A stretch of DNA of 64,000 nt from Octopus sinensis. Taxonomy: Eukaryota. The translations under genes and the position numbers were made by a program. Positions 29,590 to 58,964 of the stretch are shown here, one piece after another (positions within the stretch are counted from its first letter, which is position 1; each line of letters opens with the position of its first letter). The notes beneath the pieces were generated by a model, which was not told where the DNA came from, did not search any database, and saw only the letters and a program-made list of their open reading frames with translations. Location: positions 4,092,001-4,156,000 of the forward strand of contig NC_043012.1 of assembly GCF_006345805.1 (NCBI RefSeq), written 5' to 3'.

Positions 29590-29592
29590 AGC

Positions 29593-33200: not shown

Positions 33201-36003
33201 CTCATGTTACAAATGGCCTTCAGCTACCATCAATATATACATAATAATAGGCTACATGTTTTTGTATATATACTTTATTTTCTGAGTAACACTTTAGCAT
33301 TTGAAGCTGTTGAATTTATTCCACTTTATAAAATTTACACCTAAATTATTTGACACAAGCTGGAGTTGTTCTGTTGATTTTTTGCTGTCTCATAATGCTT
33401 AATAAAACAGTTTGAAGCTTTCTAAATTATCCAACAGCATTTCAACTTAATTTACTCTAACAGCGTCTATTTAGTTGTTCTGTTTGTCTTTTGTATTTGG
33501 AAGTTCTTAATGCTTAACTAATGTTTTAGTAGTTATAAATTTTGATGATTTGCCATGCATTGCAACATTTATAAGAGATTTCTTCATCATTATTGTAACC
33601 CAAACAGTTCTTTTGAGGTAAGTTGCAGCCACACTGTAGAACTTGCATTTGATTTGATTTGATTTTTTCCATTAAGACCATAAAAATCTTACTAAATTTT
33701 CAAAAGGTCTCCACTTACTTGCCGGAGTTGCTCTGCTTATTTTTTGTATACAAAAGTCCATTCTATCCTCATTGTCTCATAATATTTTAATGTTCATAAA
33801 TTCAGATGGTTTGCCTGACACCACAACAACCATAAGAAATTTTGATGCTACTTTAGCATGTAGTCTACTGCAGTATCTGTAATCTACACCATGAAATGAC
33901 TATCAGCCTCATGTTTACACAAGAAATGTTGTTCTTCATGAACTTCTGCAGTGAATCATACCAGAATAGTATTTTGGGAGTGATAAATATAATTTGCATA
34001 TTTCCCTGTTATTTTTGCACATATATTTACTTCCGCATCCTCTATCAACTTCCACCAGGTACTAGAGTTTTATTATGATCTTGTCTCTACCAGCATACAG
34101 CCACAATCACCATCTACATTGAGAAACACTTGCACATATACAGACGATATACAACTCAAAGTTTCATAGTTGCTATAAAAGCTAGACCTCACAATCACTG
34201 ACAATTTTTCTGGACACTTACACCCCAACAATATAACAAATCAACAATCCCAAAACTGGCCTTTCTCTTCAGGGTCAGAATGCACTTCAACTGTGAATGG
34301 TTGCTACATCTCTACAAAATCTAAAGGAGACACAGTGAAATACAGTTTTTATATCTAAGATAATGCTCCTATTGCTGCACACACATCCAAAACTGCATCT
34401 AAAATAATGTCACTAGATTCATTGGTAAGGAGTTGTTCATCAGCACACTCCAACTTTTGGCCCAAAGATATGCAGTTTCCTTACTGCCTTTTCAACTGGT
34501 TCTATAGTGGCCTTTGTACTTTGAAACTGGTTGGTTTTGCTAGTTCCACACAACTCACTTGTATCTGCTCCTCTTGATGCCTACATTTTCTACCCAACCA
34601 AAGTTCTGCACTAACTCCCCCTTTTTTAAATCCTTTCAAGACATCAACCCTCTAAAATTCTCTCTTTGCATATGTTTCTCTTATCAATTAGCAGTTTAAG
34701 AACATCTACCACATTGAATACACTGGTCTTTAAAGGCCTCTAAATCAAGCCCCTTCCTTCATACCAAGCCGAGAGAGAGAGAAAGAGTGACCTGCTATGC
34801 AGACACTTGATCTTTTAGAAACAGCAGCCAATATGAATCATACCCTGCCAATGGAATTTGTGGTGTACAAAATGATGCTGTGATCATGACTACCTACAAT
34901 TTTATCATGCTCCTGTTTTATTTCCAAAGCCTAGATTCATTCCTGAACAATGAATTTCACCAGAGTAGTTAATTAACAGTGATACATATACCAGAGCATT
35001 AACCCTCAAATTACACTAAACTAATTTGTGAAGCACAAAATATCTGAACAGAGAATACCAGTTCACTCTCAGCTCATATGAAACAGTTCTATTTGGTTTG
35101 TCTTACTAATCACTATAGCTGAAAAAAGTATGAAAGACCTAATTCAACAGTTATTTTAATGCAAGCATAAAACTATAGCTGGATAATCAACTCTTCTGTC
35201 ACTACTCATAAATTCATACATACATGAATGCAGGCATGGCCTTGTGGTTAAGAACTTTGCTTTGTAGCTATGTGGTTTTCGATTTGATTCCACTGTGCAG
35301 TACAGTATTTTTTACAGATTGATCAAAGTCTTGTGAGTGAAATTTGGTAGGCAGAAATTGTGTGGAAGCCCGTCAAAGGAAGCACCGTTTTTGGGTAGTG
35401 GGTTTAATTCACAGACCAGTTCAACACCACAACCCTTGGCCCTTGGGTGTCCTTGGTGGAGTTCACTGCTGCAAATATTTGAGTTATGTTCCACAACTGA
35501 AGATAACTTCCTCCCTTTCTGCCACCCGCCAATATCACAGTCTTTGAAAAAAGTTACGAACACAGCCCTTCCACCTCAGACTAAAATGAAAAGAAAAGAG
35601 AGAGAAAAAGATTGCGTAGGGTGGTTTTTGGACACACTGCTAGATGAAAACCAAGACCTGTCAAAGAGTGGATGAAATAGAAGCACCAACAGTCATTCAA
35701 CTATATATGCAGGAGGACTAAGAAATTTCTGGATTGGTACCCAGGCATACATCTAGCCTACCAGGGTAGGTTGGACTCTAAGCTGTGGCAAAGACAACTA
35801 ACCCAGGAGAAGGAGAATGCTAATAGAAAAGATTGAGGTATGCTGCTCATTGAGTTTGGGACAACATTTGCACCAACTTTCTACCGCCAGTGGCTGACCC
35901 TGTACAAGTCTTCATTATTTAAACCAAACCATCTGCATGGTTAGACTAATAGCTAGGCTGTTGGATCTTCATACATAGAGATTGACAGGAGAATCTACCT
36001 ACC

Positions 36004-36039
<36 letters not shown>

Positions 36040-36046
<7 letters not shown>

Positions 36047-36117
36047 GTCCATAATGATGGGATGTATTTTAAATGCTAGAATCTTTAAAATGTGTCCCAT
36101 CATTATGGTCCACCCCG
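36040..36117. mobile_element. 78-bp Tc1/mariner-type mini-MITE (near-perfect hairpin)
   Basis: 34-bp arms CAGAGTGGTCCATAATGATGGGATGTATTTTAAA vs (reverse complement) CGGGGTGGACCATAATGATGGGACACATTTTAAA, about 10-nt loop, inside a TA/CA microsatellite. Confidence 0.75.
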
Positions 36118-38504
36118 TATGTGTGTGTGTGTGTGCATATATATATATATATGTATGTATTACTCATTTACTTGTGTCGGGCTGCAACCATGCTAGGGTA
36201 CCGTCTTGAAGGATTTAGTCAATCAAATTGATTTCAGGACTTATTTAAAATTTGATACTCATTCTATCAGTCTCCTTTTGCCAAAACCATGTAACTATAA
36301 AACAGACTTCACAACAACACAGCCATACATTATATGTGTGTGTGTGTGTGTGTATCATGTATATATAAGGTTGTGTGTTTATGTATGTATATATACACGC
36401 ACACACATCAGCGTATGTTTACCAGAGTGTCAAATGCAAGTACTGAATGTGATCAACTAGCTCTTAAAGTTGTACCCAAAACAGCAGCAGTCAAATAAAT
36501 CCAACCATTGAAAGAATAAACTGGAGTCATAACTATACTCAAATTACTTTCATTGTATAACAATGGTTATTCAAAATAAATAAAAGTGTCATAGCTAAGG
36601 TTATATGAGGATTTATTGTTATTGGTTTTTAAATAGGTAGATTTCAGAAAGGAACAATTTTGCTCCATGTTGCAATTAGCTCACTCTCAAAATGCAAAAT
36701 GTTGAAGCCTCTAGAAAAAATTGTGATGACTGAGTTTATGCTGAAATAGATGCAAGAAACCTGAAGATGTAAAGAGTGTGACAGTATTGATAAGAATTAT
36801 CTCACCTAATTAAACCCTTTAATGTAGATAAAATTACTGATGGGCAAAGTCTTGTAACAGAGGCAAATTTGTTGTATTCAATAACAGCAGCGAGTAATTG
36901 TTGAATGTGTATCTTTAGCCAGATGTATTTCAGATCTGGGAGTAACTAACTATCAGATATATTCTGCTTCAGTATAGTCATGCAATAGTGGTTATCTGTG
37001 TGCACGGAAAGGAAGTTGCACCTAATTTACCATCTGCTTTTATATTATTGAAGTCTCATGTTGAAGCATATAATACGGATTCAGATTCCTTATTGTGATA
37101 TGTATTTAGGTTTTGTGCTTGACTGAATCAGAATTAGGCCATTTCAAAACAGTTTTTTTAGGATGTCACTGATAAGTGTAGGTGTTTATTAGTGGATGAA
37201 CCTGAAACACCTGAGATCAAGGCTCTGTTAGAATAGCAAAATGTTGACCACATAATGAAATATACCCAGTCCATGCCTTAAAGTGGCTGGCAATAGAAAG
37301 GACATCTCTCTGCAAGAACCATGCCAAAAATCATGGCAACAAACATTGGAGACTGTTTCTATTGTGTGTATCAAATGAAGAAAAGCAACATGTATAGAGA
37401 AACTGTATGGGAACATACCTGTCCAATCCACATCAACATGAGAAAATAGGTATACAATAATAAATGTAGGCTGGAACAGACTAGTTATACAGTGCTACTT
37501 ATGTGTCTAAGTGGTTTCCAAACAAAGTTAGCAGGTTTGGTTTTAGTATGGATGACAATACTCAAAAGAACAGTTATTTGACAATTCTAAAACTTGTAAT
37601 GACTTGCTTAATTCATCTACAAAATACTATCAATTATCCTTGCCCAGAAAAAAGAAATTCAAAGAGAAATACAAGCTGTATTATGAAATATTTAAATTTA
37701 TATATGAAACTAAACAAGCTAAATCTGATACAAGAGTGTTTAGTGAAGTACTCAAGATTCAGCAATTAGATTTTTATTTTGAACAGATGTTTTCAGTTTT
37801 GGGATTTGATAGCTTAACACTTGAATTTAAGTCCAGTTGTCATAAATAACATTAGTTAATACAAAAATTAACCACTAGATGTTCATTCAAAACTGACCAA
37901 AAAGATATTTTCATAAACTCAAATGAAAAATGACAGGTTGATGTGTTGTGGCTGTTAATTAAAGACAATCAGTGATCAGAAGTCTATTAAAGCATTCACC
38001 ACTATTTTTTTTTCTTTTTGCATTGGTTTGGTCTGGAGGAAGGTGTTGTGCCCATGGCATTCATAGGCCCACCATGACCAGTGAGAATAATGCAGTTAGT
38101 TGCACACCAGATAAGTTTCTTAAGTACCACTTATTACTATAGTTAATGAAGTACTCCTCACTGCAGTTAATAAATTATCACTAACCACTACAGTTACCAG
38201 CATTCAAGATCTAAAACCACTGCAATATGTGGATTCCCCAATAACATTTCCAACAACATTCTATAAATACTTCTTCAAATACAGTGAAAACGTGCACGAA
38301 TATGACCAGTGATATATAGCTAATCCAGAGACCAAAGAAATAGTTTATAATGATGAACAATAGAGTTATAGAAGTTGGATTGATACTCCGTCCTCAAACC
38401 ATGTTAATTAGAATAAACAGTAAATTGCTATCACTGGAGGAGGTTTTATAGTGAATGGAAATTAAATCTCGGCTATTTCAGTGCAGTGAAAATATTTGGA
38501 AAAA

Positions 38505-38568
<64 letters not shown>
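38505..38568. repeat. (TG)n(TA)n microsatellite; similar tracts at about 3340-3397, 26800-26840, 41449-41489, 43136-43273, 51190-51228
   Basis: Read directly; these tracts generate the many IYIYIY / THTHT pseudo-ORFs in the track. Confidence 0.95.
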
Positions 38569-38569
<1 letters not shown>

Positions 38570-39504
38570 CACACAAACATATGAATGAAACTTAATTTCA
38601 GTTTGGGTATGCCAAATGCAGAGATGAAAAGAAAAAAGCAACAATAAATAAATAAATAAAACACAATGCAATTGGTAATACTGAAAAATGGAGCAGAAAG
38701 AATGTATGTATGATTAAAAATCAGAACTGAAGTAAAAAGAAAAGAATGAAAGAAGAAAAAAAAAAGAAGGAAAACTAGCAAACATTTTATAGACCATATG
38801 TTGCAGTTTTGAATACACAAGATAATGAATAAGAGTGGGAGATGAAATGTTGCAGATTGTAAGCTGTAGAATTGTGGAAGTGATGTTGGGAAAATAGAAG
38901 TTGCTATCAAAATACAGAGAGGTAGCATTGTACAATATATATGGAAAAGCATTATGTAAATAATGAAACCAATTAGTGCACAACAGATGCAGAGGCATCT
39001 CAACAAATACACATTGTATAAGCAGTACAAGTATTGGACTGCAACAATGGATCATTGGAGTGTAGATGACAGCTAGAAAATAGACTGAATGCAAGAAGAG
39101 AATGCAATTTTATCTTTATTAACTCCAAAAGGATGTGTTGTTAAAAATCTTATAAATTATAATGAAGACCTATCACTGAAAGACTGTCTGCAATGATTTC
39201 AATAAAATCCACTGAAAATAATTACATGATGAAATGTCTGATTACTGCAAAACAACAAATAATATTTGCAGCCGAGGAAACTGTATTGATATTGACATGT
39301 CATAAAATGAATGAGAACTAAACGAGTGAATATTGCAAGTTCGGGTTAAACTAGAACAGAGGCGGATAAGACAAAGTTAGATCGAAAGCTGACCTAAAAG
39401 ATAAAAGGAAGGGAGATAACTAAGGATAAAGGATGAAGAGCAATGAACATAGCCATAAGCTGTTAGACAAAAGCACGAAAACAATTGAGAACTAGTCAAA
39501 ATAC

Positions 39505-39535
<31 letters not shown>

Positions 39536-41446
39536 ATTCGGAATGAAGCAGTAGTGAATTTCTGATACTGTTCTCACGTAAAGAGCACACTACTGACATT
39601 CTTCAAAAACTTAGCAACGATGAGAAATGTACGCATGAAAATGAAATGAAATAAAGACGGGTGGGTAGCAGATTTATTTATGATGGAAAATTGATCAACG
39701 CAACGGGTGGAATTCAAAATTTTGCAACAGAAATCTGTCAAATTCTGTACCAAATACTATAAGAGTTATTAAGGAAGCGGCGCAATCAATATCATTTTAA
39801 AATTCAAAATGAAGCCGTAGATATGTGGCAAATTGATTAATATTTTAACAGCAGTTTATCCAAGCACTACAACTATTTTTCTTTGGAAATCAATTCTAAG
39901 ATTTAGAAAGAAAATATCGCAATGGAATTGCTCTGATCACATTCAGATGTATTGCTTGAAGATAGTGAAGCCCATTGAGCAAATTGAAACAGCTGCAAAC
40001 CAAACAAAATTAAACGAATGAGCTTCGAATAATTCAAGATACATTAAAATCAACACCGAGAGAGTCTCTACATGATACCTCGACCTGCTAGAAATAACAG
40101 CCAAATCTCTTTCAATTAAGACTTTTGTTCTAACCACACCCCTAAAAAGGCGGGATGGTGATGACTGGAATGCTTTTTGATCACGTATCTGCTAGAACAA
40201 GGTTGACCCATGTCTAAACACATGGACATACAAATTAGTCAATTAGTCCATTCATAATAGATTCTCAGCTGAGATTGGTCTTGAGGAATGTTTCAGGGAT
40301 GCATATATATACTTGCGATATCTAGATGATTTATACAAGTGTAGGGTAAAAAAACAACAAAAAACCTAAAGAATGTCAGCAAAGATCATTGAAGAGAACA
40401 TGCAAAATATTGGACAAATCTAACATATTTTACTCGCCTTACTAAATATTACATACAACGCCCCACCCCATTAATTTCACACACACACATATGTACTTGG
40501 TATTTTGGTAGTGGCAAGGAGAAAACAATCCAAGCATAGATCAACGACAATGTGTGTCATATAATCGATAGAAGAATTATTAAAAAATACTGACACAAAT
40601 AAGTTGGGCTAATAAAACAAACTTGCATTAAGAGTTAAATAATTAATTAAGCATTAGCGTTAATTAGAGGTCATGCATCCGGGACAAATAACAGATAATG
40701 ATGTATCGACATAAAAAAAAAATCTGTGACAAATTAATTATAATTATCACCCGCTTAAAGTTTAACTGGCAACTTTTCTTCTCTATAAACTTTCGGTTAC
40801 ACACAAAACTGGTCCTCACATACATACATACATACATACACAATATAAACTTACTCCAATGAAAACGAGTTGAAACTTAAGAAAATTTCAGCTCAAATCA
40901 TTCGTGTTTATTGAGACAAAATTATAGCTTTTAAAATAAGGTTGTACCTCAAGTGACCATTCATTTAATTATACCGCATATTAAAACGATCAATTTAATA
41001 AGACTGCACCATAAAATCATTTTAATTAGTGTGTATCTATACTAACAACAACAACAAACCAGTGTCAAAAGTTCAGCTAATAGATACCGATAGATATGTA
41101 ACATTACTTAGAAGTAACATTTCAGAAAACACACCCAAATTGCAATGACTACTGAAGCAATTTATGTAAGATTTTGGGAAAGGCTGCGAGAAAATATTTC
41201 AAATTCAGATGCTGTTAGTTAATTTGCTACACTGTTTAATAACATTTCAAATTATTCTCCAGGAAGAAATATCTCGTAGTAATTCATCTTTATATCCGAG
41301 ATTTTAAATAGCTAAACTACGTTGGTTGGCACGTTTCATACAATATCCGAGTTAACAAACTATTTTAGAAATCTACCATCATTACTATTATTAAACGAGA
41401 TAAAGTGATAAGGTTTTTTTAAAATTCTGACTCAGACGGAAAAGAT

Positions 41447-41490
<44 letters not shown>

Positions 41491-43223
41491 CAGCTTATTT
41501 TTCAGATTTATTGTTTGCTCGAAATATTTAAATCGAGAAAGGATTCTATTATTAAATCTAGTACAACTGAATATAGCCTCGTAATGAACCTTTCAGAAAT
41601 ATGAACATAAATTTAGGTTCAAAGCTTAATTTACTTCTACCTAATTTGTCTGACATTGTCGTAGGCGGAATGGACATAAACACATACTGTGACAATTCAT
41701 TCTATATACAAAAGAAATGTTTTTATCTTCTCTCAATGCGTATGCTTTTGTTGATAAGAATTCGAAACTAAAGCAATACCTACTTTGGAGAATTGGGGTT
41801 AAGAAAAAAGTCTCTTTTTTACCCAATAATAATAGTAATAGTTTCAAATTTTAGCACAAGCCCTGCAATTTTAAGGGAGGGGCTAAGTCGATTACACTAA
41901 TCCCCAGTGTTCAACATTTTTTGTGCTTATTTTATAATAAAGAATCATAACAAATATCACATAACCGTTTAAGATTTCTTTGTATATTTTTATGCTTGTG
42001 GAAGTTTGCCCTCTGTAGATATGTTTAAATGTATCAATAAAAAAAAAAGAGAGAGAAAAAGGAATGTCAACGAAATTGGCATGGAGTTTCCAGTATCATT
42101 CATTATTTATGAAACAGCTGAGAAAGGAACGGTACACACATCCGACACTTAAAAGAGGATAAAGAAAAACCCGGCACTAAATTAAATAATCTTATATCAC
42201 ATGGAATTTATCAGAGAGGGAGAGAGAGAGAAAGGCGATATGGTGGTAGCTTAGCATATTTTTAGTGTTAATAACCTAGAAACTAATTTCTTTTGCTCTA
42301 ACAATTGCAATATAGTATTTCACACGGAAATAATATTTTTTTTTTTCTTCTTTAGACGATTTTCAAAATTTTCTTATTATTTTTGCAAAAATAGCAAGAG
42401 GGACGTATTTGTAATCTGAAATAGCAATATGACACTTCGTTTCTAGATAATAAAACCCCGCATAATCACGAGGGTGAGAAAAAAAAAAAAAAGAGTTTCT
42501 TTATAGACACAGTTATGAAGAGTAGTGTGGTTTGGTTTGAAAAGTCATTGGAGGCGAGGGTTCGATTCGAAGGAGTTGTTTGTTCTGTTGTCGTCGTCAA
42601 GTGGGTGTGAAAGTTGATTTGCACTGAGTCAGCCAGTCTGTTGTTAGTGTTGGCACCCACCAACTTAATATCAGCTTGCCATATGGTTTCCACAGCGCTG
42701 TTTATATGCCAAATGTCGCTCCCTAAATGACTACGTACTCAGAAGTTCCCTAAACTGTCAGAATGTGTGTGTGAGCGCGCGCGCGACGGATATGATGTAG
42801 GACAACAAGAACAAAAACTGTTTCGATAAAAAAGAAAAAAAAAAAAACGATATGAAAATAAAATTCAATTTCCCCTTTTTTTTTAAAAAAGTATATACAA
42901 TATCAAACAACATAAAAATTTGCATAATGAAAATAAAAATCCCAACATGTTTGGTGTTACTTATATAACAAACATCAACAAAATCAATCTAATTCTAATT
43001 TACGCTTTGTCAAAAAAAAAAAAAAAATGTTAGTGAGGCAGTGTTTTATTTGTAGGTGTGTGTGTGTGTAATAAACTAACAAATCGTTACACTTAGTTAA
43101 TTAACCCTCTCCCATCTTGTAACACACATACAATATCTATATATATATATATATATAGATATATATATATATTTGGTTTCGTGACGTTTAAGTCGTTACG
43201 CACAATACACACACACGTATATT

Positions 43224-43275
<52 letters not shown>

Positions 43276-43766
43276 CCAGGGATGTTTAATGCCGAAACTA
43301 CTGGCCTGCAATTCAGAGAAGGAAGTAGGTAGTACTGTTTGCGAATAGACATATGTGATGAGATGGACAATAAAATGTAAAGGGTCAAAACTGTAACAAT
43401 GGAATTAACCATTAAAACAAATTATTATTGAGAGCGATGCAGGTGGAGAAGACAGTTAAAAAAGGAAAAAAAAAAAAATAGCGTTTAGAGGTGGTAATTA
43501 GTTCGTTGCTACATAGTTTGAGTTCGATTCCCGCCGGGGATGAGCGAATCTTTTTTTTCTTTTTTTATCTTCCTTTCTGACTGACTACATCCATGAAATA
43601 AATACGAGTTAGATGATATTGAAAGCAGGGTTGATTCAATCGATTGTAATTCTTTACGAAAAGAACAAAATGTGAAGAAGAGAAAAAAAATGTAGTCTTG
43701 TAGCTTCATAATACAAATAAAATGATTTTCCTCCACACCAACAGTAAAACATCATCATTTACTTAC

Positions 43767-44413
43767 CTCGGGAAAGCATCAAAAAACCAAGTGCGTTTTG
43801 TATCCGGAAAAGCCAAACGTACACCAGAGGTAAGAGGCGAATGTAGGATAACAGCTCCAACTTCAAATCTTGAAGCGAGATCCACAGTAGGAACTGTACC
43901 TATACTTTGTCCGTACAAAATGACATTTTGTGGACTGATGCCATAACGAGTCCGCAGGGCTTGTAAAGCCGCATCAATATCCGAATAAAGATTTTTCTCC
44001 GAAGGTTTTCCTGAGCTAGCTCCATAGCCGGAATAATCGTAACTAAAGATATTACAGTTGATTCTAGATCCGAGTCCGATATAAAAACTACTCATTTGTC
44101 CTAAATCGACTGCATTTCCGTGGCTGAAAAGGAGAGTGAAACGAGCGTTGGGTGAACATCGAACAAACATACATGAGATTCTGTTTCCCCGTGTAGTTCT
44201 CGTCATGAATACTTCGATACAATCCAGTTCTTTTTGCGAATACTGCCACTCTGCTCTTTCTGTCAGATGCAAACTGTACCGTGAGCCTGTTTGGTCCGAT
44301 ACAAGAGAATATGTCGGTTCTGGAGGCAGAAACGCCAGTTTGGCAGCGATACGGGAGGGACATGGCGGACAGCAAAAAAGACAACAAAGCTCGCTGAGAG
44401 AGAGGCCGTTCAT
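43767..44413 (-). CDS. ABHD17: ABHD17-family alpha/beta-hydrolase (protein depalmitoylase), coding exon 1 (647 nt, ends in phase 2)
   Basis: ORF 43763-44413 reads [35 protein letters not shown]...[11 protein letters not shown]...YDYSGYG...GQSIGTVPT..., the ABHD17 signature with the N-terminal Cys cluster and nucleophile GxSxG. The ORF runs into a donor AG|GTAAGT at 43767/43766. The paralog letter (A/B/C) cannot be assigned for an invertebrate. Confidence 0.97.
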
Positions 44414-44932
44414 ACCTTAGGTTTGGGGCCTAAGCAAATGGTAAAAAAAAAAAAAAAATGAACAAACCAGGCTGTTGAGTACAGACTAAGCAGGCACACA
44501 GCCACTTTTAAGACAACCACGACAACGTAATGTAGAACATTCAATTCACAAAGTATTCCTAGACATGAGACGTATTCAACTGGAAGCGAGTAAGACGACT
44601 ATTCAATATGACGTCACATGCCATCGACGGGAAAACGAGTTCGACTGCATATCTCCCAAATCCACATCCGGTATTTCCTAATAGTCAAAAAGAAAAAAAA
44701 CAACAGGTTTTTATCAAAATAAAATAATTAGTGAAATATTACGAAAGAAAGATAGAATAAAAATATCAAAGCGAATTCGTGATGTTAAATTAAGAATATT
44801 CTTTAAAAAAAAAAAAATATTTCCGGGCTACTTGTGCATCACGTCACTTCCGTAATGTAGTGTCCATTAGGGGAAGCACATGGTAAATCTTGGCTCCAGA
44901 TTCTTTTACAAAAATAACAACAAAAATTTAAG
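44414..44932. promoter_or_regulatory. Bidirectional promoter / 5' UTR region shared by ABHD17 and C9orf85-like
   Basis: 519 bp between divergent ATGs. CRE palindrome TGACGTCA at 44609-44616; ETS-type sites ACATCCGG at 44664-44671 and TTCCGG at 44821-44826; overlapping CRE-half/ETS composite ACGTCACTTCCG at 44841-44852. TSS positions cannot be read from sequence. Confidence 0.75.
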
Positions 44933-45141
44933 ATGAGTTCACAGAAAGGTAATGTGAAGAAAGCTGGCCCACCCCGTCACAGAAACAACACAGCTTTTAG
45001 AAATAATTTACACGATAACAGTATCAAACAGAAAATGATAAATTCTTTGGAAATTACTGGATTGTGTGATTCGTGTACTAGAGTGATTGAATGGAAAATA
45101 AAATATAAAAAGTACAAACCTCTCACAAATCCTAAAACTTG
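44933..45141 (+). CDS. C9orf85: C9orf85-like (DUF2039, Cys-pair) protein, first coding exon (209 nt, phase 2; remaining exons not found in window)
   Basis: MSSQKGNVKKAGPPRHRNNTAFRNNLHDNSIKQKMINSLEITGLCDSCTRVIEWKIKYKKYKPLTNPKT(C) matches the C9orf85 N-terminus as I recall it (MSSQKGNV..., CxxC, EWxxKYxKYKPL). Ends TG|GTAAGC, splitting the next conserved Cys codon. Confidence 0.9.
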
Positions 45142-45769
45142 GTAAGCACAATTCTCGTAACTTTACGTCTTTTATTCTTCGTATTTAAATTTGTGAATTT
45201 GCATCTATTTCTCTTCTCTTTCATTAAATTCAATCAAATTTCTAAAAATATTTCACTGCTTTTGAAATTGTTGAAAATTGCAGCAATAGTCGACTCCGAC
45301 TTTCATTTCCATAAGAGCACCAATAAGAATATTGTAATATATTCAAATGATCGTATATTATCCCTGAGTGAGACATTTTAGTTTACACACCTTTTCGACC
45401 AAATATGACTCTTCCCACAGAGACAGCCACTAGGAATTTTAACTGAGAAATGCCATGTGTACACTAAGCATTCCGTATTCTTTAAAAAGCATCGGTCGAT
45501 GAATTAACTACCACTTAAGCACGGGGTTATTGTAAACGACTATTTTATATATAAGTATAAGGCTTATTATAGGCTTTATGCCTATAATAGAAAATATTAC
45601 TACTCTAATAAGTTAGACAAACAATCGAAAAGAGCTTCCATTAACAATAGTTTCGCAGCCAAAATCTAAATACGAATATGAACTAGATTATTCTGATGTA
45701 GCCTTTGTTATCTCTCCAATAACGACTGTCACCTTCTTGGGTTAACAAACCGTTTACGAGCCAACGTGA

Positions 45770-46620
45770 TCGATCTATTAGAAATAACGGTAAATTTATG
45801 GTTTCACACCAGACTCGATTTCGGCACTAAATCGTTTTTTTTCCCGCACGTGTGGTGTCAACAAAATTTTCTTCGTGGTTTATCATGTAACGTTGATAAC
45901 CCAATGTTTGTATATCTTTCTAAGCCTCCCATGAATCACTAGATAACTGAGCCAGGTTTGATGTATTTTTGAATTAGTGGCAACCACGTCGCTTTGTCAC
46001 GCTTCTGACCAGTCGGAAGAACAACAAAGCGACATTTGGTGTGTGAAACTATAAATTTACCGAAATAACAGCCAAATCTCCATATCCGACTGTCTTAAAA
46101 ATGAACACATTGTGGGTCTGTATGTATTGTGTCTAAACATGACAAGACTGACTCTTCGATAATGAAGCAACAGGTGATCTGATTTGCTAGAAATAGTCAC
46201 ACCCCCCTCACAAACTGCTCCCCGACGCATTACTTAAGGAAAGATACATGGAATAATGGGCACCCATATAATTATAAAAGACTGGGTGATCACGGATAGA
46301 ATGCCTTTGGTTATAGGTCTGCTCGATTAGGCTTCATTTGGGGTTAAATAACAGCCCTTTAATAAATGCTTTCAAGTCTAGAAGGAGGCGATATTCTGAC
46401 AATATATATAACCTATACCTCCAAATGATTGCTCGATCGTTTAGAAATAGCAGTCAACTCTTCCTCAAATCACAAACCACTGTTCCAAACAAGACAGGAT
46501 GCATTGGATAGTAGGAGCATTAAGTCTTAACAAAAAGGAAGACAGGTTTGTCATGGTTGGAATACCTTTCATTGATCAGCTCGACCAAAGGCAATCCAGG
46601 AGCGAAAATAAATATTAACA
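45770..46620 (+). repeat. Cluster of an unclassified short interspersed repeat (core GCTAGAAATAGCAGCCAAATCT...GGAATGCCTTTGATCATAGG)
   Basis: About four tandem degenerate copies here. Further copies at about 8488, 11066, 18345, 40086, 58348 (+) and about 47520, 47750, 49530, 55975, 56155, 56740, 62820 (-). Confidence 0.7.
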
Positions 46621-46739
46621 GCGTCACATAAGAAAGGTGTTCATCCGGAGACAACTACACGTCTAATATTACATATTCTCTGCATTTGTTTATAAACATA
46701 GCATATTATTTACTATTACTTAGGTTGAAAGTGATTGTT

Positions 46740-46995
46740 TGGTAGAATTTAAGTCCTGCTGTGTAGCACCTTAAGCAAGTGTCTTCTACTATAACCTCGG
46801 GTCGACCAAAGCCTTGTAACTGGATCTGGTAGAGGGAAACTGAAAAAAGCTCATCATATATACATGTGTGTGTGTTTGTCCTCCCAGCACTACTTGATAA
46901 CATGTGTTGGTGTGTTATTTACATACCTGTGCAACAAAAGAGATTGACTAAAATTCTTCAAGGCATGACAGCAGTCTAATGACTGAAACAATTAA
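46740..46995 (+). mobile_element. Octopus tRNA-derived SINE, decayed
   Basis: GCAAGTGTCTTCTACTATAACCTCGGGTCGACCAAAGCCTTG block. Confidence 0.7.
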
Positions 46996-48007
46996 GAGAT
47001 AAGACAAAAAAAAAAAAAGATAACCTAAAGATGTGAGGACAGCACCTTTTTGCAGTTTTCGTTTTGGCTCTACTTTTAGACTTCGAGGTCAGCTTTGTCT
47101 TTTACCCTTCCGGGTTCGATGACCTCGACTAATCCCCTTCTTTTTTTAATTTGATGGCCTTTTGCCTGGTTGACATTTATTTTATTATGTGTTTTCATGT
47201 ATAAAGTATAAAGTAGTTTTTTGATTACATTGCAGTTTATTGATTGTCTTTGTACAAACTGCGAACTGTTACTTAGCTTCCAGTAAAGTTTGTAATACAC
47301 TGGACCTGATGTTTGTTTTCAAGTGATATTCTGGACTAAACATTTTGAATTGTTAAAAATCGATTAAATGCTATCTGACCATATTGCTTTGACGGTTTCA
47401 ACTGGTTACTTAAAGCCCCTGAGAGCCCTGATCAAAGGCAGAAAATGTATGCATTTTTTAAAGGCAATATGAGTGTGCATGCAGAGTGTCTTTCTCCTTT
47501 TATGGTTTGATTTGAGGGAGATTTGGTTCTTATTTCTAGCAGATCGAGCGACCACACGTAGAAGTTCCCTTGTTAGCGTTAACTGGTGTTGGGATTATTT
47601 TTAGCTCAAGTCAGCTCTATTCAAGCAGGTCTTTTATCAAAGGCGTTCCAGCTTCAAGCATCCCGTCGTTTTTGCATATTCCGCAATGATTTGTCCAAAC
47701 ACCATTTCCTTTTTATTTATTTATTTGATAGTAGAGTGTGATCTGTGAAGGGTTTAGCTGCTATTTCTAGCAAATTAGCTTACCATAAAGATACTTACCT
47801 TGTCTAAACTTCGTCGCTTCTTTAAAATACTAAGAGTGGACAGATGTGTTTATCTAATGTTAGCTCCTAATCGGGTTTTCTTTTCAAATGAACTGTAAAT
47901 AGTATTATGAGAATGAATTGACTTAATACAGACGACAATCTTCATTAATTGTCATTGTATTAAGTTTCGTCATTAAGAAACATTTTCAGATTAATGTTGG
48001 TATTTTA

Positions 48008-48632
48008 TCTTTTACTTTTTTCAGTTATTGGACAGTGGTTATTCTGGAGTTCTGTCTTGAAGGGTTTAATCCACTGTTTCTCAACCGTTTTCTACTTTTA
48101 GACCCCCTTGATTCCTATGTTACTCAGATGGACCCTCATAGCCATTTGATGTTTAAAAAACCCTATTATATTTTGTATGATTAAATGTTAAAAACTGTAT
48201 TAAAAACTTGAAATATTTTGTGCTCTAGAAGTATAACCATTTTATTGCACATAAATTTTAACTATCTTATGCGCCCACCCCCCGGGGGTCATATGCCTCC
48301 CCCACTCCCCGTTGAGAGCCACAGGTTTAGTCGAACAAATCGACCCCAGTGCTGATTTTTTAACACTTGGTACTTATTCCCCCTGTCTCTTTTTCTGAAC
48401 TGCTAAATTATGGGAAGTAAACAAACCAACAACAGGTTGTCAAGTGGTCGTGTGGGACAAACATAACATAACATGACACACACACACACTAAGGGGAGTT
48501 TCTTTCAGTTTTATAAGGCTATGGTCTGCCCCAGGCTATAGTAGAAGACACTTGCCTAAGGTGTCACATAATGGCACTGAACTCAAGACTACATGGTTGG
48601 GGAATCAAGTTTTGTAACTACAAGCTGCACCT
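48008..48632 (-). mobile_element. Octopus SINE interrupted by a hAT-type MITE
   Basis: SINE tail at 48008-48071 continues at 48325 (GTTTAGTCGAACAAATCGACCCC). Confidence 0.75.
48072..48324. mobile_element. hAT (Charlie-like) MITE, 253 bp, 8-bp TSD
   Basis: Ends CACTGTTTCTCAAC ... GTTGAGAGCCACAG; TSD GTTTAATC (48064-48071) / GTTTAGTC (48325-48332). Confidence 0.8.
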
Positions 48633-48707
48633 GTGTTTTTATTAATGATCACTCATATATTTTTCAAGATTAAGAGACTCATTTTGTTTTTGTTTTTTTC
48701 TCCTACA

Positions 48708-49220
48708 TCATCATCGTTTAACGTCTGCTTTCCATGCTAGCATGGGTTGGACGGTTTGACTGAGGACCGGTGAACCAGATGGCTGCACCAGGCTCCAATG
48801 TGATCTGGCAGAGTTTCTACAGTTGGATGCCCTTCCTAACATCAACCACTCCAAGAGTGTAGTGGGTGCTTTTACATGCCAGTCAAGTGGTACTGGCAAT
48901 GGCCACACTCAAGTCGTGTTTTTTATGTGCCACCAGCACAAATGCCAGTAAGGTGATGCTGGTAACGATCACGTTTGAATGCTGCTTTTTACGTGCCACC
49001 GGCACAGAAGCCAGTCAGCTGCTATGGCAGCGACCACACTCGTATGATGCTCTTAGTGTCCCACTGGCACAGGTGCCAATCATTGAATTTGTGAATTTTT
49101 TTTTATTTCAATTTCACTTGCCTCAACAGGTCTTCGCAAGCAGAGCTTAGTGTCCACTGAAGGAAAGGTACGCATAAGTGGCTGGTTACACCCCTGGCAT
49201 AGGCCACGGGTTATGGGATC
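48708..49220 (-). mobile_element. RTE 3'-UTR-only element (same subfamily as 19125-19685); another tail fragment follows at about 49220-49345
   Basis: CATCATCATCGTTTAACGTC tail; far end reads GCCACGGGTTATGGGATCT, the reverse complement of the UTR start. Confidence 0.8.
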
Positions 49221-50269
49221 TTTCCATGCTGGTGTGGGTTGGATGACTTGATAGGAGCTGGCAATGTTAGGGGCTACATCAGGCTCCATAGTCTGCTTTT
49301 GGCTTGGTTTCTACAGCTGATACCGTTCCTGACATCAGCCACTTTAGTGTGTTCTTGATGCTTTTTATGTGGAATCTTGGTTTTATTTCAATCATTGGAC
49401 TGTGGCTATACTGGAGCACTGCTTTGAAGGCTGTGACCAAACAAATCAACCCCAATATTTATTTTTTAAGTCTGGTACATATTCTGTTGGTTTCTTTTGC
49501 CAAACCACTTTTTATTAGAAGGGACATTTGGTTACTATTTCTAGTATGTTAAGTGATAACATAGTGGTTTTCTCATTTGGCTTGCTAGAAAAGTCATTTT
49601 TCTATGAAGAAGGGACTATTTCAGGACCTTAGTCAGGTGAGAGTTGGGAATCTTATATGCAATTATCTTTTAAGAACAGACTGCTGGTTGTAAAAGGAAT
49701 ATATTGGTAGGGAGTAGGTTTTGAAAGCCTTATAATTCTGTGGTTAGGAGAGCCATCTATATTAATTGGTGTGAAGCTTTAGTGGTGGACTGGACCATTT
49801 CAGAGATAAGTATCATTTGCTTTGGCGGCAAAGAGCTTCTGTATGGTTGGCCCAAAATGAAATCAGCATGGAAAATGGGTGTTAAATGATGATGATGATG
49901 ATGATGATGAATACTGCTGCTCTAGATACACTGTGGTTGTGATTAAAAAACCAAAAAAACCCTTTGATGATCATTATGGATGGAATACCTTTGATCATAG
50001 GTGTTGGTTGGTTGGCATCCTTTTTGTCTCGGGAGACAATGGAGTTGTGCATAAAGTAGTCTAGTCCGGCTTTTACATTTCATGTCCTGATACATTTCCT
50101 GCTGTGGCTGTGTAGTCCTATCCTGGACAAACACTCCGAGAGATAAACAAGAGCAGAGTTTGTGACAAGATGGCTTAACAACATGCGTTTAACATAGGAA
50201 CTTCATGCACAGACACACAATTGCCAATACAATATCATAATCTCTTTTTCTCCCCATCTCTCTCTATAT

Positions 50270-50640
50270 ATATGTGTGTGTGAGCATATGGTCAAGAAGT
50301 TTATTCTCCAAGTATGTGTTTTTAGGTTCAGTCTTACTGTTTGGCACATTGGGCTAGTGTCTTCTACAGCCCTGGGCCAACCAAAGCCTTGTGAATGGAT
50401 TTGGTGGACAGGAACTGAGAGAAGACCGTTATATGTGTTTGTCTACATTTGCAGTTCCTTGTATGAAAATGCAGGAAGCAGTGTTATTGGTAGTTTCGCT
50501 TGTCAACAAATCGTCTGATATAAACAGAATAAAGGATCCCTTACTTGAAAAACAAATAAGGGTTTGTGTCATGAAGAGCAACCAGCTGTAAACAATGCCT
50601 CAAGTAACATATTTGTCCTTCTCGTGCCAGTATGGAGAAA
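50270..50640 (+). mobile_element. Octopus SINE (decayed) with RTE-type tail
   Basis: Head GGTCAAGAAGTTT...GGTTCAGTC; AAAGCCTTGTGAATGGATTTGG block. Confidence 0.6.
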
Positions 50641-50774
50641 AATGGGTGTAAATATGAATGAATGAACCACCACCTAGTCCATTCTGTCACTTGCATTTTG
50701 ATCAGATCTCCAGGTTATCCTTCAGTCTTGCTATGGGTACTGTCCTTACATCTTTATGTTACCTCTTTTTTTTT

Positions 50775-51185
50775 TATCTCTTACTTGTTTCAGTCATGCT
50801 GGGGCACTACCTTGAAGAATTTTAGTCAATCTCTTTTGCTGCAGCATTAAGTTACAGGGATGTAAACACACCAACACCTGTTGTCAAGCAATGGTGGGAG
50901 GACAAACACAGATACAGATATGAGCTTTTTTCATTTCCCTCTACCAGATCCAGTCACAGGGCTTTGGTTGGCCTGAGACTACACTCTTGCTTGTTTCAGT
51001 CATTTGACTGTGGCCATGCTGGGGCACTGCCTTTAGTCGAGCAAATCAACCCCAGGACTTATTCTTTGTAAGCCTAGTACTTATTCTATCGGTCTCTTTT
51101 GCTGAACTGCTAAGTTACAGGGATGCAAACACACCAGCATCGGTTGTCAAGCGATGTTGGGGGGGTAAACACGCACACACACATG

Positions 51186-51232
<47 letters not shown>

Positions 51233-51472
51233 GATGGGCTTCTTTCAGTTTCTGTCTACCAAATCCACTCACAAGGCTTTGGTCGGCCCGAGGCTATAGT
51301 TAGAAGACACTTGCCCAAGGTGCCACGCAGTGGGACTGAACCCAGAACCATGTGGTTGGTAAGCAAGCTACTTACCACAAAACATTTGCCTAAGGTGCCA
51401 TGCAGTGGGACTGAACCTGGTACCGTGTGGTTGGGAAGCAAGCTTCTTACCACACAGCCGCACCTGCACCTG
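50775..51472 (-). mobile_element. Nested SINEs: younger copy (about 50987-51379) inserted into an older copy (50775-50985 and 51380-51472)
   Basis: Two tails and two heads of different subtypes (GTAAGCAAGCTACTTACC vs GGGAAGCAAGCTTCTTACC); the older copy resumes where it was interrupted. Confidence 0.75.
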
Positions 51473-51559
51473 TAAAATAAAATGATAATAAATAACAAGG
51501 TAACAGAGAAATGTGATTCAAGAAAGTAGGTATGTTGTTAGATTTCTAGTCTAAGAAAA

Positions 51560-51905
51560 TGATCCCTGTGTACCTTCCTCATTGTCTGCAGACCACTTTC
51601 TCCAGAATTCCCTTTCGTGCGTAGCTCTTGGTTGTTAGCTCTTCAGTAGACCAGAGTCTTCAAACAGTTGGTCGATGAATGTTTTAACAGGATGACCCCT
51701 AGGCCACTTTCCATGTATTGGTTCCCACTTCGTCATTTCACTCACTACTTCATCTCTGCTACGAAAGCAAAGAAGAAAATGATAAATTTCCTCATAACAT
51801 TGTTTTAATGTCTGCTTATCTATGCTGACATGTATTGGAGGGAACTTTTTGAGATGGTGTTTTATGGTCAGCTGTCCATTTATACACCAACCATTTTTAA
51901 TCACT
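51560..51905 (-). mobile_element. Old RTE-clade LINE C-terminal fragment
   Basis: ORF 51635-51904: CFRSRDEVVSEMTKWEPIHGKWPRGHPVKTFIDQLFEDSGL, resembling the RTE W.P.HGKR.RGRP.KT motif. Confidence 0.7.
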
Positions 51906-52949
51906 CTTTACAGCATGCAGTGAGTGATAACAATATGTCGATTCTTAAAACCAGGATACACATAGTATTAACAGATTTAGCGGAATATGAAGCAAAATTT
52001 TAAAGATTGATTTTAGCTTCACCTGCTTATGTAATTGAATGGATGTTTCTTTCTTTCATTGATTTATCATGAAGTCTATAATATGTTACCTGTAACTATG
52101 CTAATTGGAGTGCTGTTCCTTATCATTTATGACAATGATTATATCAGTGCAAAGTAATCGCATGCAGTGATTCACTTTTTCTTCATTGATTCTTTCACAA
52201 GATTTGATCTTGGTTAGAATGCTCCATTTTAAGTCACTCACCTTCTTTTAGTATTTGTTATATCGATCGTTAATTGGATCAGGGCCACATCAGTACTTCG
52301 TTCAGGATTACAACAGCATAGTGCTTGTAATGGAGGGAAACAGCCTTCCAATATTTCATCCTCCAATGCAGTTGCACCAGTCTTGCCTCCTTCAACATCA
52401 AAAACACAATTATTTACATATCAAGAAGACTTTATCCTGCCTCACTACCATATAAGCAGCATGCAACTGAAGCCCTTGGGGTTACTCCAAATGTTAGTCT
52501 TCTCTATTACTGAGGGTCTCTCCTTGCAAACACACATTATTTACAAAGCAGAGATTGCACCTCAATGACTAGTCTTTCTCTTTAGGGACAGAAAATAACT
52601 CCAGCCCCTAATAACTACTAATCCTCTACAATGCTTAACTGAGACTACTAAATGGGGGAATGCTATTCCCACATCAGTTCTCAATTTTACTGGTAATAGG
52701 GGCCTGTGGAAAGCCATCAGTACAGCTTCTTCCCCAAAAGTTACTTTTGTTACTGTATAGTTATAAGTTCAATTCCATTGCATGGCACGTTGGTCAAGTG
52801 TCTTCTACTATAGCCTCAGGCTGGCCAAAGCCTTGTGAGTGGATTTGGCAGATGGAAACTGAAAGAAGCCCATCTCATTTGTATATATATATGTGTGTGT
52901 GTATATATATATATATATAATCATCGCTTAACGTCCATTTTCCATGCTG

Positions 52950-53107
52950 GCATGGGTTGGACAGTTCAACTGGGGTCTGGGAGGCCAGGAGGCTGCACCA
53001 GACCCCAATCTGATCTGGAAGTGTTTCTGCAGCTGGATGCCCTTCCTAATGCCAACCACTCCGAGAGTGTAGTGGGTGCTTTTTACGTGTCACGTATGTA
53101 TGTATTT

Positions 53108-53140
<33 letters not shown>

Positions 53141-54498: not shown

Positions 54499-54532
54499 AA
54501 TAATATTCTTTGTACTATATTATATTGTCTTT

Positions 54533-58832: not shown

Positions 58833-58964
58833 TATTTTAAACATGAACCCTTACAAATCAGTAGGCTTTATCATACAGAATTACATGTAGATTGGTACCA
58901 AAAACATTAAAAAACCGATAGGCCCGGCTATAATTCCTCAAATTCCTTTCCTCTAACTCCAAAG

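What the first reader, a model, noticed from the sequence alone, without database searches (positions are those of the whole stretch)
43767..45141. ABHD17 and C9orf85 head-to-head on a ~0.5-kb shared promoter, apparently as in human
Seen: divergent ATGs at 44413 (-) and 44933 (+), 519 bp apart. Recalled: human ABHD17B (FAM108B1) and C9orf85 are adjacent and divergently transcribed at 9q21. Established: coleoid genomes are heavily rearranged and lost many ancestral gene linkages. Inference: a tight divergent pair shared by octopus and human would date to the bilaterian ancestor and imply long-term selection for co-regulation of a depalmitoylase with a poorly characterised small Cys-rich protein. 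That would give a functional lead for C9orf85. It would also mark ABHD17B as the vertebrate paralog at the ancestral locus.
Basis: partly seen in the sequence, partly recalled or inferred. Interest (0 to 1): 0.75.

Follow-up and report, generated by a model that had tools for sequence, protein, structure and literature searches.

The report
Ancient ABHD17–C9orf85 divergent gene pair
In this Octopus sequence the depalmitoylase gene ABHD17B and the small zinc-finger-like gene C9orf85 start back to back 519 bp apart, an arrangement also found in a limpet, a brachiopod and a fish; it is a real but fairly ordinary conserved bidirectional-promoter pair.

Summary
Exon 1 of ABHD17 runs 44413..43767 on the minus strand. 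Spliced to 3916..3694 it gives a 289-aa protein identical to annotated Octopus ABHD17B. Exon 1 of a C9orf85/DUF2039 gene runs 44933..45141 on the plus strand. The two ATGs are 519 bp apart.

The same head-to-head pair occurs in:
- Lottia (1298 bp apart)
- Lingula (422 bp)
- an unidentified metagenome contig (539 bp)
- a teleost, turbot, inside the CEMIP2–ABHD17B–C9orf85–GDA block that is also the pig gene order

The pair is absent within 10 kb in Nematostella, a sea urchin, a hemichordate and a tick. In a ladybird and in Dimorphilus the two genes lie on different contigs. So the pair probably dates to the protostome–deuterostome ancestor and was lost repeatedly.

The intergenic region sits in the only CpG-non-depleted island of the 64-kb window. 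It has no TATA box and holds the window's single full CRE (TGACGTCA) plus ETS-like sites. That CRE lies 151–246 bp upstream of the ABHD17 ATG in every invertebrate locus examined, with or without C9orf85.

Elsewhere both genes pair head-to-head with other partners. I therefore read the retention as promoter entanglement and a tiny breakpoint target, not as shown selection for a functional link. It is a new member of a known kind, of modest interest.

The parts
43767..44413 (-). ABHD17B coding exon 1 (215 codons + 2 nt). It carries the N-terminal Cys cluster [11 protein letters not shown] and the GQSIG nucleophile motif. The donor GT lies at 43766-43765.
   Evidence: 76-90% identity to metazoan ABHD17B; the spliced product is identical to annotated Octopus ABHD17B.
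3917..43766 (-). ABHD17B intron, 39,850 bp, strongly CpG-depleted except for its promoter-proximal ~3-4 kb.
   Evidence: exon positions; CpG o/e 0.03-0.35 over most of it.
3694..3916 (-). ABHD17B last coding exon, including the TAG stop. It is preceded by a polypyrimidine tract and AG acceptor.
   Evidence: the full protein passes the Pfam Hydrolase_4 threshold (44.8 bits vs 27).
44414..44932 (.). 519-bp intergenic region between the two start codons: the putative bidirectional promoter. It has no TATA box, is AT-rich with two poly(A) runs, and has CpG o/e of about 1.1.
44609..44616 (.). Full palindromic cAMP-response element TGACGTCA, the only copy in the 64-kb window. It lies 195 bp from the ABHD17 ATG and 316 bp from the C9orf85 ATG.
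   Evidence: 1 match, 0.38 expected in the whole window; same element 151-246 bp upstream of the ABHD17 ATG in Lottia, Lingula, L044, Nematostella, Ptychodera and Lytechinus; two copies in the turbot core.
44664..44671 (-). ETS-like site CCGGATGT (read on the minus strand), 47 bp from the CRE.
   Evidence: Read. CGGAAGT or CTTCCGG lies 4-36 bp from the CRE in Lottia, Lingula and Nematostella. Function is inferred.
44841..44852 (+). ACGTCAC (CRE half-site-like) fused to CTTCCG (ETS core), 86 bp upstream of the C9orf85 ATG.
   Evidence: An ETS core lies 65-86 bp upstream of the C9orf85 ATG in turbot and in one clade of metagenome contigs. The statistical support is weak.
44933..45141 (+). C9orf85/DUF2039 coding exon 1 (69 codons + 2 nt). 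The donor GT lies at 45142-45143. The intron sits inside a Cys codon, at the same place as in Lottia, Lingula, L044 and many other loci.
45142..64000 (+). Presumed first part of C9orf85 intron 1 (more than 18.8 kb). No further C9orf85 exon is detectable here. It becomes CpG-depleted from about 46.3 kb onward.
   Evidence: no exon 2; CpG o/e. That this is intron is an inference.
40500..46250 (.). The only CpG-non-depleted island of the window (o/e about 0.8-1.2 against 0.31 window-wide). It straddles both first exons and the intergenic region.
   Evidence: The interpretation as a germline-unmethylated promoter follows the octopus methylome pattern 'MP2' in PMC9476566.

Best explanation
This is the Octopus copy of an old head-to-head gene pair, ABHD17(B) and C9orf85. 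[quoted passage not shown]

The two genes start from one small, unmethylated, TATA-less, housekeeping-type promoter region. Its best-conserved element is a full CRE (TGACGTCA) with ETS-type sites nearby. ABHD17 is transcribed leftwards from just beside the CRE. C9orf85 is transcribed rightwards from within about 300 bp of it.

The CRE/ETS module belongs primarily to ABHD17. It is found at the same distance from the ABHD17 ATG in cnidarian, echinoderm and hemichordate loci that lack C9orf85.

The pair has persisted where it has because the two core promoters are physically interleaved in a few hundred base pairs. A break there would damage at least one gene, and the target is tiny. It has not persisted because the two proteins need each other.

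Shown: gene identities, arrangement, taxonomic distribution, motif conservation, the CpG island. Inferred: transcription start sites, use of the CRE and ETS sites, absence of methylation, the reason for retention.
For: Identity and arrangement.

The same divergent pair elsewhere:
- Lottia: ATGs at 8702(-) and 10001(+)
- Lingula: 3414(-) and 3837(+)
- metagenome contig L044: 2391(-) and 2931(+)
- turbot: C9orf85 7342-9292(-) and ABHD17B from 10001(+), flanked by GDA and CEMIP2
- pig gene order and the chicken 6-kb window
- Lineus: both genes on a contig of the same length, 29,188,318 bp

One promoter domain: the region 40.5-46.2 kb is the only CpG-non-depleted stretch of the window. It matches the class of octopus genes with a methylated body and unmethylated TSS that are highly and constitutively expressed (PMC9476566). 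The 519 bp contain no TATA box.

The CRE:
- It is single-copy in 64 kb.
- It is the only copy in the Lottia, Lingula, L044, Nematostella and Ptychodera loci.
- It always lies 151-246 bp upstream of the ABHD17 ATG, where the chance expectation is about 0.003-0.004 per locus.

No exclusive partnership: Ptychodera ABHD17 is head-to-head with a Trm112p gene. Tick C9orf85 is head-to-head with a Kgd4/MRPS36-like gene.

The general class is established: conserved ancestral microsyntenic pairs are enriched for 5'-5' orientation and sub-kb spacing (PMC3514665).
Against: No transcript, CAGE or methylation data were available, so the start sites and the sharing of elements are inferred.

The pair was missing in six of the sampled lineages: Nematostella, Lytechinus, Ptychodera, Haemaphysalis, Coccinella and Dimorphilus/L005. 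Among deuterostomes it was seen only in vertebrates. An ancestral origin therefore requires at least three losses. No amphioxus, tunicate, priapulid, myriapod or other cephalopod could be examined.

Absence was tested only within 10 kb of the coding start. A pair separated by a long 5'UTR intron or a transposon insertion would be missed. L002 has a CRE 266 bp upstream of C9orf85 and RT-like ORFs beyond it.

The human orientation was not checked with a tool. C9orf85 exon 2 is not in the window, so an intact Octopus gene is inferred from the Argonauta annotation.
Confidence: 0.7

Rival explanations
1. One reading: the pair is ancestral and has been kept by selection for co-regulation because the two proteins act in a common process. 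The linkage would then be a functional lead for C9orf85.
For: Orientation and sub-1.3-kb spacing are conserved across three or four phyla. The pair is retained in Octopus although coleoid genomes are strongly rearranged. Conserved 5'-5' pairs as a class show elevated co-expression (PMC3514665).
Against: The pair is lost in at least six sampled lineages without loss of either gene (12 vs 26). Each gene sits head-to-head with a different housekeeping-type partner elsewhere: TRMT112 in Ptychodera, MRPS36/Kgd4-like in the tick. The conserved CRE follows ABHD17, not the pair. The only interaction lead found for human C9orf85 is the BRISC deubiquitinase complex, not palmitoylation (hu.MAP3.0). No paper links the two genes functionally.
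Confidence: 0.15
2. Convergence: the spiralian and vertebrate pairs arose independently. Both genes have promiscuous, intrinsically bidirectional housekeeping promoters that readily acquire a divergent neighbour.
For: The pair is absent from the two ambulacrarians, the two arthropods, the cnidarian and the dinophilid annelids sampled. Both genes are found with other head-to-head partners.
Against: The same two genes out of roughly 10^4, in the same orientation and with comparable spacing, would have to come together twice. By inference that chance is of order 1e-4 per relocation. Loss of adjacency is by far the commoner event in animal genomes (PMC3514665). The turbot core also carries full CREs between the two genes.
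Confidence: 0.08
3. Two independent promoters that merely lie close together. The CRE module would drive only ABHD17, and a separate ETS-type core about 86 bp upstream of the C9orf85 ATG would drive only C9orf85, with no shared regulation.
For: The CRE is conserved with ABHD17 irrespective of C9orf85. An ETS core lies 65-86 bp upstream of the C9orf85 ATG in turbot and in a clade of contigs that lack ABHD17 nearby. About 230 bp of AT-rich sequence separates the two motif clusters in Octopus.
Against: Both motif clusters lie in one continuous CpG island and within about 240 bp, too close for insulation. In Lottia the C9orf85 ATG is preceded by a splice-acceptor-like tract, which suggests a non-coding first exon starting nearer the CRE/ETS module. 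The support for the -86 ETS site is statistically weak.
Confidence: 0.25

Closest known systems
Human/vertebrate ABHD17B (FAM108B1)–C9orf85 locus, 9q21.13 block CEMIP2–ABHD17B–C9orf85–GDA
   Same: The same two orthologous genes, adjacent and divergent. This was shown here for turbot. Adjacency and order are shown for pig and chicken from papers.
   Different: In vertebrates the ABHD17B start codon follows a splice acceptor. ATG-to-ATG distance is therefore several kb (2.8 kb in turbot), whereas Octopus, Lingula and L044 have both ATGs within 0.4-0.55 kb. The human orientation was recalled, not tested.
Conserved ancestral microsyntenic pairs (CAMPs) with bidirectional promoters, e.g. HSPD1–HSPE1 (Irimia et al. 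2012, PMC3514665)
   Same: 5'-5' orientation, sub-kb spacing, conservation of orientation across phyla, and a housekeeping-type promoter.
   Different: HSPD1–HSPE1 encode physically interacting partners and are linked in nearly all species. ABHD17–C9orf85 has a patchy distribution and no known functional link. I could not check whether this pair is in that paper's list, because the supplement is not held.
CpG-island, TATA-less bidirectional promoters of mammals (head-to-head genes with start sites under 1 kb apart; ETS/GABP and CRE motifs common)
   Same: A CpG-non-depleted island inside a depleted landscape, no TATA box, CRE and ETS-type motifs, and divergent genes less than 1 kb apart.
   Different: This is an invertebrate with mosaic gene-body methylation. 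The island is AT-rich (about 34% G+C) and is defined by lack of CpG depletion rather than by high G+C. Start sites are unmapped.

Membership tests
ABHD17 depalmitoylase family (minus-strand gene) | Alpha/beta-hydrolase fold detectable by profile | tested here: met
   The full spliced protein scores Hydrolase_4 44.8 bits (cutoff 27), Abhydrolase_6 35.9 and Abhydrolase_1 34.6.
ABHD17 depalmitoylase family (minus-strand gene) | Orthology to named ABHD17 proteins | tested here: met
   The protein is an exact match to annotated Octopus ABHD17B. It is 76-90% identical to ABHD17B/A/C of animals from cnidarians to mammals.
ABHD17 depalmitoylase family (minus-strand gene) | N-terminal cysteine cluster and GxSxG nucleophile, Asp and His of the triad (from general knowledge of the family) | tested here: met
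   [11 protein letters not shown] at residues 9-19 and GQSIG are in exon 1. The GTDDE and GAGHND motifs are in exon 2. Catalytic activity itself was not tested.
DUF2039 / C9orf85 family (plus-strand gene) | Pfam PF10217 match above the gathering score | tested here: met
   59.1 bits against 27, covering profile positions 2-55 of 89.
DUF2039 / C9orf85 family (plus-strand gene) | Complete domain with all conserved cysteines | tested here: inconclusive
   Only exon 1 (two of the Cys) is in the window. Exon 2 was not found in 45142-64000. The Argonauta ortholog is complete: 211 aa, 103 bits.
Bidirectional promoter (divergent genes with start sites under 1 kb apart) | Head-to-head orientation with less than 1 kb between the genes | tested here: met
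   519 bp between the start codons.
Bidirectional promoter (divergent genes with start sites under 1 kb apart) | Mapped divergent transcription start sites and shared cis-elements acting in both directions | not testable with these tools
   No transcript or CAGE data were available. This needs 5' end mapping and a dual reporter.
Bidirectional promoter (divergent genes with start sites under 1 kb apart) | CpG-island-like, TATA-less sequence | tested here: met
   CpG o/e is about 1.0-1.2 against 0.31 for the window. There is no TATAWA in the 519 bp.
Conserved ancestral microsyntenic pair (Irimia et al. 2012) | Adjacency of orthologs in distantly related animal clades | tested here: met
   Mollusca (Octopus, Lottia), Brachiopoda (Lingula) and Vertebrata (turbot; pig and chicken from papers).
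Conserved ancestral microsyntenic pair (Irimia et al. 2012) | Conserved relative orientation | tested here: met
   The orientation is divergent in all five loci where the pair was seen.
Conserved ancestral microsyntenic pair (Irimia et al. 2012) | Presence in outgroups or intermediate lineages, supporting a single origin | tested here: not met
   The pair is absent within 10 kb in Nematostella, Lytechinus, Ptychodera and Haemaphysalis. The two genes are on different contigs in Coccinella and Dimorphilus. Amphioxus was not available.

The most novel reading that the evidence does not exclude
The CRE (with neighbouring ETS sites) 150-250 bp upstream of the ABHD17 start codon is a promoter module that has been fixed since before the cnidarian-bilaterian split. 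This would make this depalmitoylase an ancient CREB/ATF-family target. C9orf85 (and TRMT112 in hemichordates) would be genes that docked onto this module and are co-induced with it. If C9orf85 really shares cAMP- or activity-dependent regulation with ABHD17 in spiralians and vertebrates, the linkage would be a genuine functional lead for an uncharacterised protein.
Probability: 0.25. Interest if true: 0.5.

Novelty: new member of a known kind. Interest (0 to 1): 0.35.

Why it matters
This adds one well-documented example to the few hundred gene pairs whose adjacency and orientation have survived since early bilaterians. It shows that such a pair persists even in the heavily reshuffled Octopus genome. 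It identifies ABHD17B as the vertebrate paralog at the ancestral locus.

The practical by-product is a compact (about 0.5 kb), motif-defined, probably constitutive bidirectional promoter from a cephalopod. It could serve as a driver in cephalopod or mollusc transgenesis.

A second by-product is a strikingly conserved CRE in ABHD17 promoters across eumetazoans, which makes CREB/ATF control of depalmitoylation testable. The pairing does not by itself tell us what C9orf85 does.

Tried and rejected
- I searched the window for further C9orf85 exons with Lottia and other C-terminal peptides, a broad DUF2039 HMM on six-frame fragments, and the Argonauta protein. Nothing was found, so the gene model in the window is exon 1 only.
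- I looked for the Lottia and Lingula downstream neighbour TIM44 and the Lottia TTC7 gene in the window. Neither is present.
- I looked up a marsupial ABHD17B locus. It was uninformative, because the coding exon follows a long 5' intron and C9orf85 lies outside the 10-kb flank.
- 31 of 32 metagenome contigs carrying C9orf85 exon 1 have no ABHD17 exon. Their organisms are unknown and many have under 3 kb of upstream sequence, so they were not used as evidence of loss, except the dinophilid-like L005. Taxonomic placement of L044 by best hits was ambiguous.
- Upstream ORF scans of the unknown contigs for alternative partners were uninformative.
- Literature searches for the pair (C9orf85+ABHD17B, +FAM108B1, +bidirectional) found no paper discussing it. 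The supplement of Irimia et al. 2012 is not held. A search for ABHD17+CREB (ten titles and abstracts screened, none opened) turned up no promoter study.
- Rfam and ARAGORN found no RNA gene in the window.
- I rejected a pseudogene or retrocopy reading of either exon. Both keep conserved intron positions, intact donors and all nearly invariant residues.
Full report
**Observation.**
A minus-strand ORF begins with ATG at 44413 and runs to a GT donor at 43766-43765, so the exon is 44413..43767. A plus-strand ORF begins with ATG at 44933 and runs to a GT donor at 45142-45143, so the exon is 44933..45141. The bases between the two start codons, 44414-44932, number 519. The minus-strand ORF (216 aa) is the longest ORF in the whole 64-kb window.

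**Identity of the minus-strand gene.**
- The exon matches metazoan ABHD17 proteins at 76-90% identity, with E-values down to 1e-133.
- A second coding exon lies 39.85 kb away at 3916..3694, behind a polypyrimidine/AG acceptor.
- The spliced 289-aa product is an exact match to the annotated ABHD17B of Octopus vulgaris, O. bimaculoides and a third Octopus entry. This validates the gene model and shows that the window is from the genus Octopus.
- The full protein passes the Pfam alpha/beta-hydrolase thresholds.
- It carries the N-terminal Cys cluster and the GQSIG nucleophile motif.

**Identity of the plus-strand gene.**
- The exon matches Pfam DUF2039 at 59.1 bits against a cutoff of 27, over profile positions 2-55 of 89.
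- It is 91% identical to the annotated C9orf85 homolog of the octopod Argonauta hians.
- It keeps every invariant and nearly invariant residue of an alignment of 28 homologs.
- Its intron position, inside a Cys codon after ...KPLTxPK(T/K), is the same as in Lottia, Lingula, L044 and many other contigs.
- The rest of the gene is not in the window. Peptides from other species, a broad HMM and the Argonauta C-terminus all fail to find exon 2 in 45142-64000. Intron 1 therefore exceeds 18.8 kb. Other loci have exon 2 within 0.2-1.2 kb.

**Is it 'as in human'?**
I could not fetch the human locus. The evidence is this:
- In turbot, a DUF2039 gene (7342-9292, minus) and the FAM108B1/ABHD17B-like gene (from 10001, plus) are head-to-head. 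They are flanked by an amidohydrolase (GDA-type) gene beyond C9orf85 and by a CEMIP-type gene beyond ABHD17B.
- tblastn places the canonical ABHD17 ATG at 12105, after a splice acceptor.
- The order matches the pig list CEMIP2, ABHD17B, C9orf85, GDA (PMC8871947).
- In chicken one 6-kb window overlaps both genes (PMC10954189).
- My recollection that human ABHD17B (minus) and C9orf85 (plus) abut at 9q21.13 is consistent with this, but it remains recollection.

**Distribution.**

| Lineage (locus) | Arrangement |
|---|---|
| Octopus (window) | head-to-head, 519 bp between ATGs |
| Lottia gigantea (L001) | head-to-head, 8702(-)/10001(+), 1298 bp |
| Lingula anatina (L011) | head-to-head, 3414(-)/3837(+), 422 bp; ABHD17 unannotated because it runs off the scaffold end |
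| Metagenome contig L044, unplaced | head-to-head, 539 bp |
| Turbot (L013) | head-to-head |
| Lineus | both genes on contigs of identical length (29,188,318 bp); adjacency not seen |
| Nematostella (L008, L009) | no DUF2039 within 10 kb upstream of ABHD17 |
| Lytechinus pictus (L010) | no DUF2039 within 10 kb upstream of ABHD17 |
| Ptychodera flava (L012) | pair absent; a Trm112p gene sits head-to-head with ABHD17, 603 bp away |
| Tick, Haemaphysalis (L046) | C9orf85 head-to-head with a Kgd4/MRPS36-like gene, 402 bp away |
| Coccinella, Dimorphilus | the two genes lie on contigs of different length |
| L005, dinophilid-like (88% to Dimorphilus) | no ABHD17 nearby |

Absence was tested only within 10 kb of the coding start.

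The same two genes in the same orientation in spiralians and vertebrates is far more easily explained by common descent with repeated loss than by two independent assemblies. However, no amphioxus, tunicate or slowly evolving ecdysozoan could be examined.

**Anatomy of the intergenic region.**
- *CpG island.* The window as a whole is strongly CpG-depleted (o/e 0.31). One stretch of about 40.5-46.2 kb has o/e of 0.8-1.2, and all twelve highest 600-bp windows fall there. It straddles both first exons. In O. bimaculoides, genes with methylated bodies but unmethylated start sites form a large class that is highly and constitutively expressed (PMC9476566). The CpG pattern fits that class for both genes, and it also fits 46.3-64 kb being transcribed intron.
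- *No TATA box.* The 519 bp contain no TATAWA.
- *The CRE.* The region contains the only full CRE, TGACGTCA, of the 64-kb window, at 44609-44616 (0.38 expected in the whole window, so about 0.003 in 519 bp). The same octamer lies 151-246 bp upstream of the ABHD17 ATG in Lottia, Lingula, L044, Nematostella, Ptychodera and Lytechinus. It is the only copy in five of those loci. Two copies lie between the turbot genes. The chance expectation per locus is 0.003-0.004.
- *ETS sites near the CRE.* CGGAAGT, CTTCCGG or CCGGATGT lie within 4-55 bp of the CRE in Lottia, Lingula, Nematostella and Octopus.
- *ETS site near C9orf85.* ACGTCAC-CTTCCG sits 86 bp upstream of the Octopus C9orf85 ATG. An ETS core is also found 65-86 bp upstream in turbot and in one metagenome clade. 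That enrichment is weak.

The CRE module is therefore an old ABHD17 promoter feature that predates, and is independent of, the C9orf85 partnership.

**Mechanism.**
I infer one unmethylated, nucleosome-poor housekeeping promoter region with two closely spaced core promoters firing in opposite directions. The ABHD17 start lies between the CRE and 44414. The C9orf85 start lies between the CRE and 44932. The human C9orf85 promoter is described as a dual-initiation housekeeping-type promoter (PMC10716046). Start sites, factor binding and methylation state are not shown here.

**Why it is retained.**
Conserved ancestral pairs as a class are enriched for 5'-5' orientation and sub-kb spacing (PMC3514665). 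Three observations argue that retention reflects promoter entanglement and a very small breakpoint target rather than a need to co-express functionally linked proteins:
1. The pair has been lost repeatedly while both genes persist.
2. Each gene is found head-to-head with a different partner elsewhere.
3. The conserved element follows ABHD17 alone.

The only interaction lead I found for human C9orf85 is the BRISC complex (hu.MAP3.0). No paper discusses the pair. Survival in a rearranged coleoid genome is expected for a 0.5-kb interval under random breakage. This last point is an inference.

**Comparison with what is known, and verdict.**
This is a bona fide ABHD17B gene and a bona fide C9orf85/DUF2039 exon. 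The arrangement meets the sequence-level criteria for a bidirectional promoter and for a conserved ancestral microsyntenic pair. One caveat applies: the outgroup and intermediate lineages sampled lack it.

The pair is not described in the searchable literature, but the kind is well known, so I classify it as a new member of a known kind. Interest is modest. The most useful new element is the eumetazoan-wide CRE in ABHD17 promoters.

Noticed in passing
window 44609-44616; L001 8880; L011 3566; L044 2555; L008 9830; L012 9820; L010 9747; L013 9551 and 9660: A full CRE (TGACGTCA) lies 151-246 bp upstream of the ABHD17 start codon in every invertebrate locus examined, from cnidarian to mollusc, whether or not C9orf85 is the neighbour. 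It is usually the only copy in 15-64 kb. ETS-type sites often lie within 4-55 bp of it.
   Followed up: yes
window ~40500-46250 versus the rest of the window: The window is strongly CpG-depleted (o/e 0.31; many 1-kb bins at 0.03-0.2). The exception is one island of about 5.7 kb (o/e 0.8-1.2) centred on the divergent start codons. This suggests methylated gene bodies on both sides and one unmethylated promoter.
   Followed up: yes
window 3917-43766 and 45142-64000; L001, L008, L011: Intron expansion in Octopus is extreme. The single ABHD17 coding intron is 39.85 kb, against about 1.5 kb in Lottia and about 1.3 kb in Nematostella. C9orf85 intron 1 is more than 18.8 kb, against 0.2-1.2 kb in all other loci.
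   Followed up: partly
L001 14058-19943; L011 7326-11018; L004 14774-16728: A TIM44 gene lies convergently just downstream of C9orf85 in Lottia, Lingula and one unidentified contig, which looks like a second conserved adjacency. No TIM44 exon is present in the 19 kb downstream in the Octopus window.
   Followed up: partly
L012 9026-9397 (Ptychodera); L046 4591-9598 (Haemaphysalis): Where the pair is broken, each gene still sits head-to-head with another small housekeeping-type gene. ABHD17 pairs with a Trm112p gene (603 bp away) and C9orf85 pairs with a Kgd4/MRPS36-like gene (402 bp away).
   Followed up: partly
L002 3906-9735: In this unidentified 1.6-Mb contig a full CRE sits 266 bp upstream of the C9orf85 ATG. 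Retroelement-like ORFs (RT_RNaseH, faint) fill the next 5 kb, and no ABHD17 coding exon lies within 10 kb. The pair may have been split or stretched by a transposon insertion.
   Followed up: no
L001 ~9970-10000; also L003, L034, L036, L041 just upstream of the C9orf85 ATG: A polypyrimidine tract plus AG lies immediately before the C9orf85 start codon. This suggests a non-coding first exon in these species, so the start site in Lottia may lie close to the CRE/ETS module about 1.1 kb upstream.
   Followed up: no
window 43500-43560: A tRNA T-arm-like stretch (GAGTTCGATTCCCGCCGGGG) followed by a T-run lies in the ABHD17 intron 200 bp from exon 1. It may be the tail of a tRNA-derived SINE. ARAGORN and Rfam report nothing, and it is single-copy in the window.
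   Followed up: partly
window 43093-43412: (TA)n/(TATATA)n microsatellite runs lie inside the CpG island, in the ABHD17 intron.
   Followed up: no
window 38473-39030 (-): This is the second-longest ORF of the window (185 aa, TTG start). It has no Pfam match and is probably spurious or a decayed repeat.
   Followed up: partly
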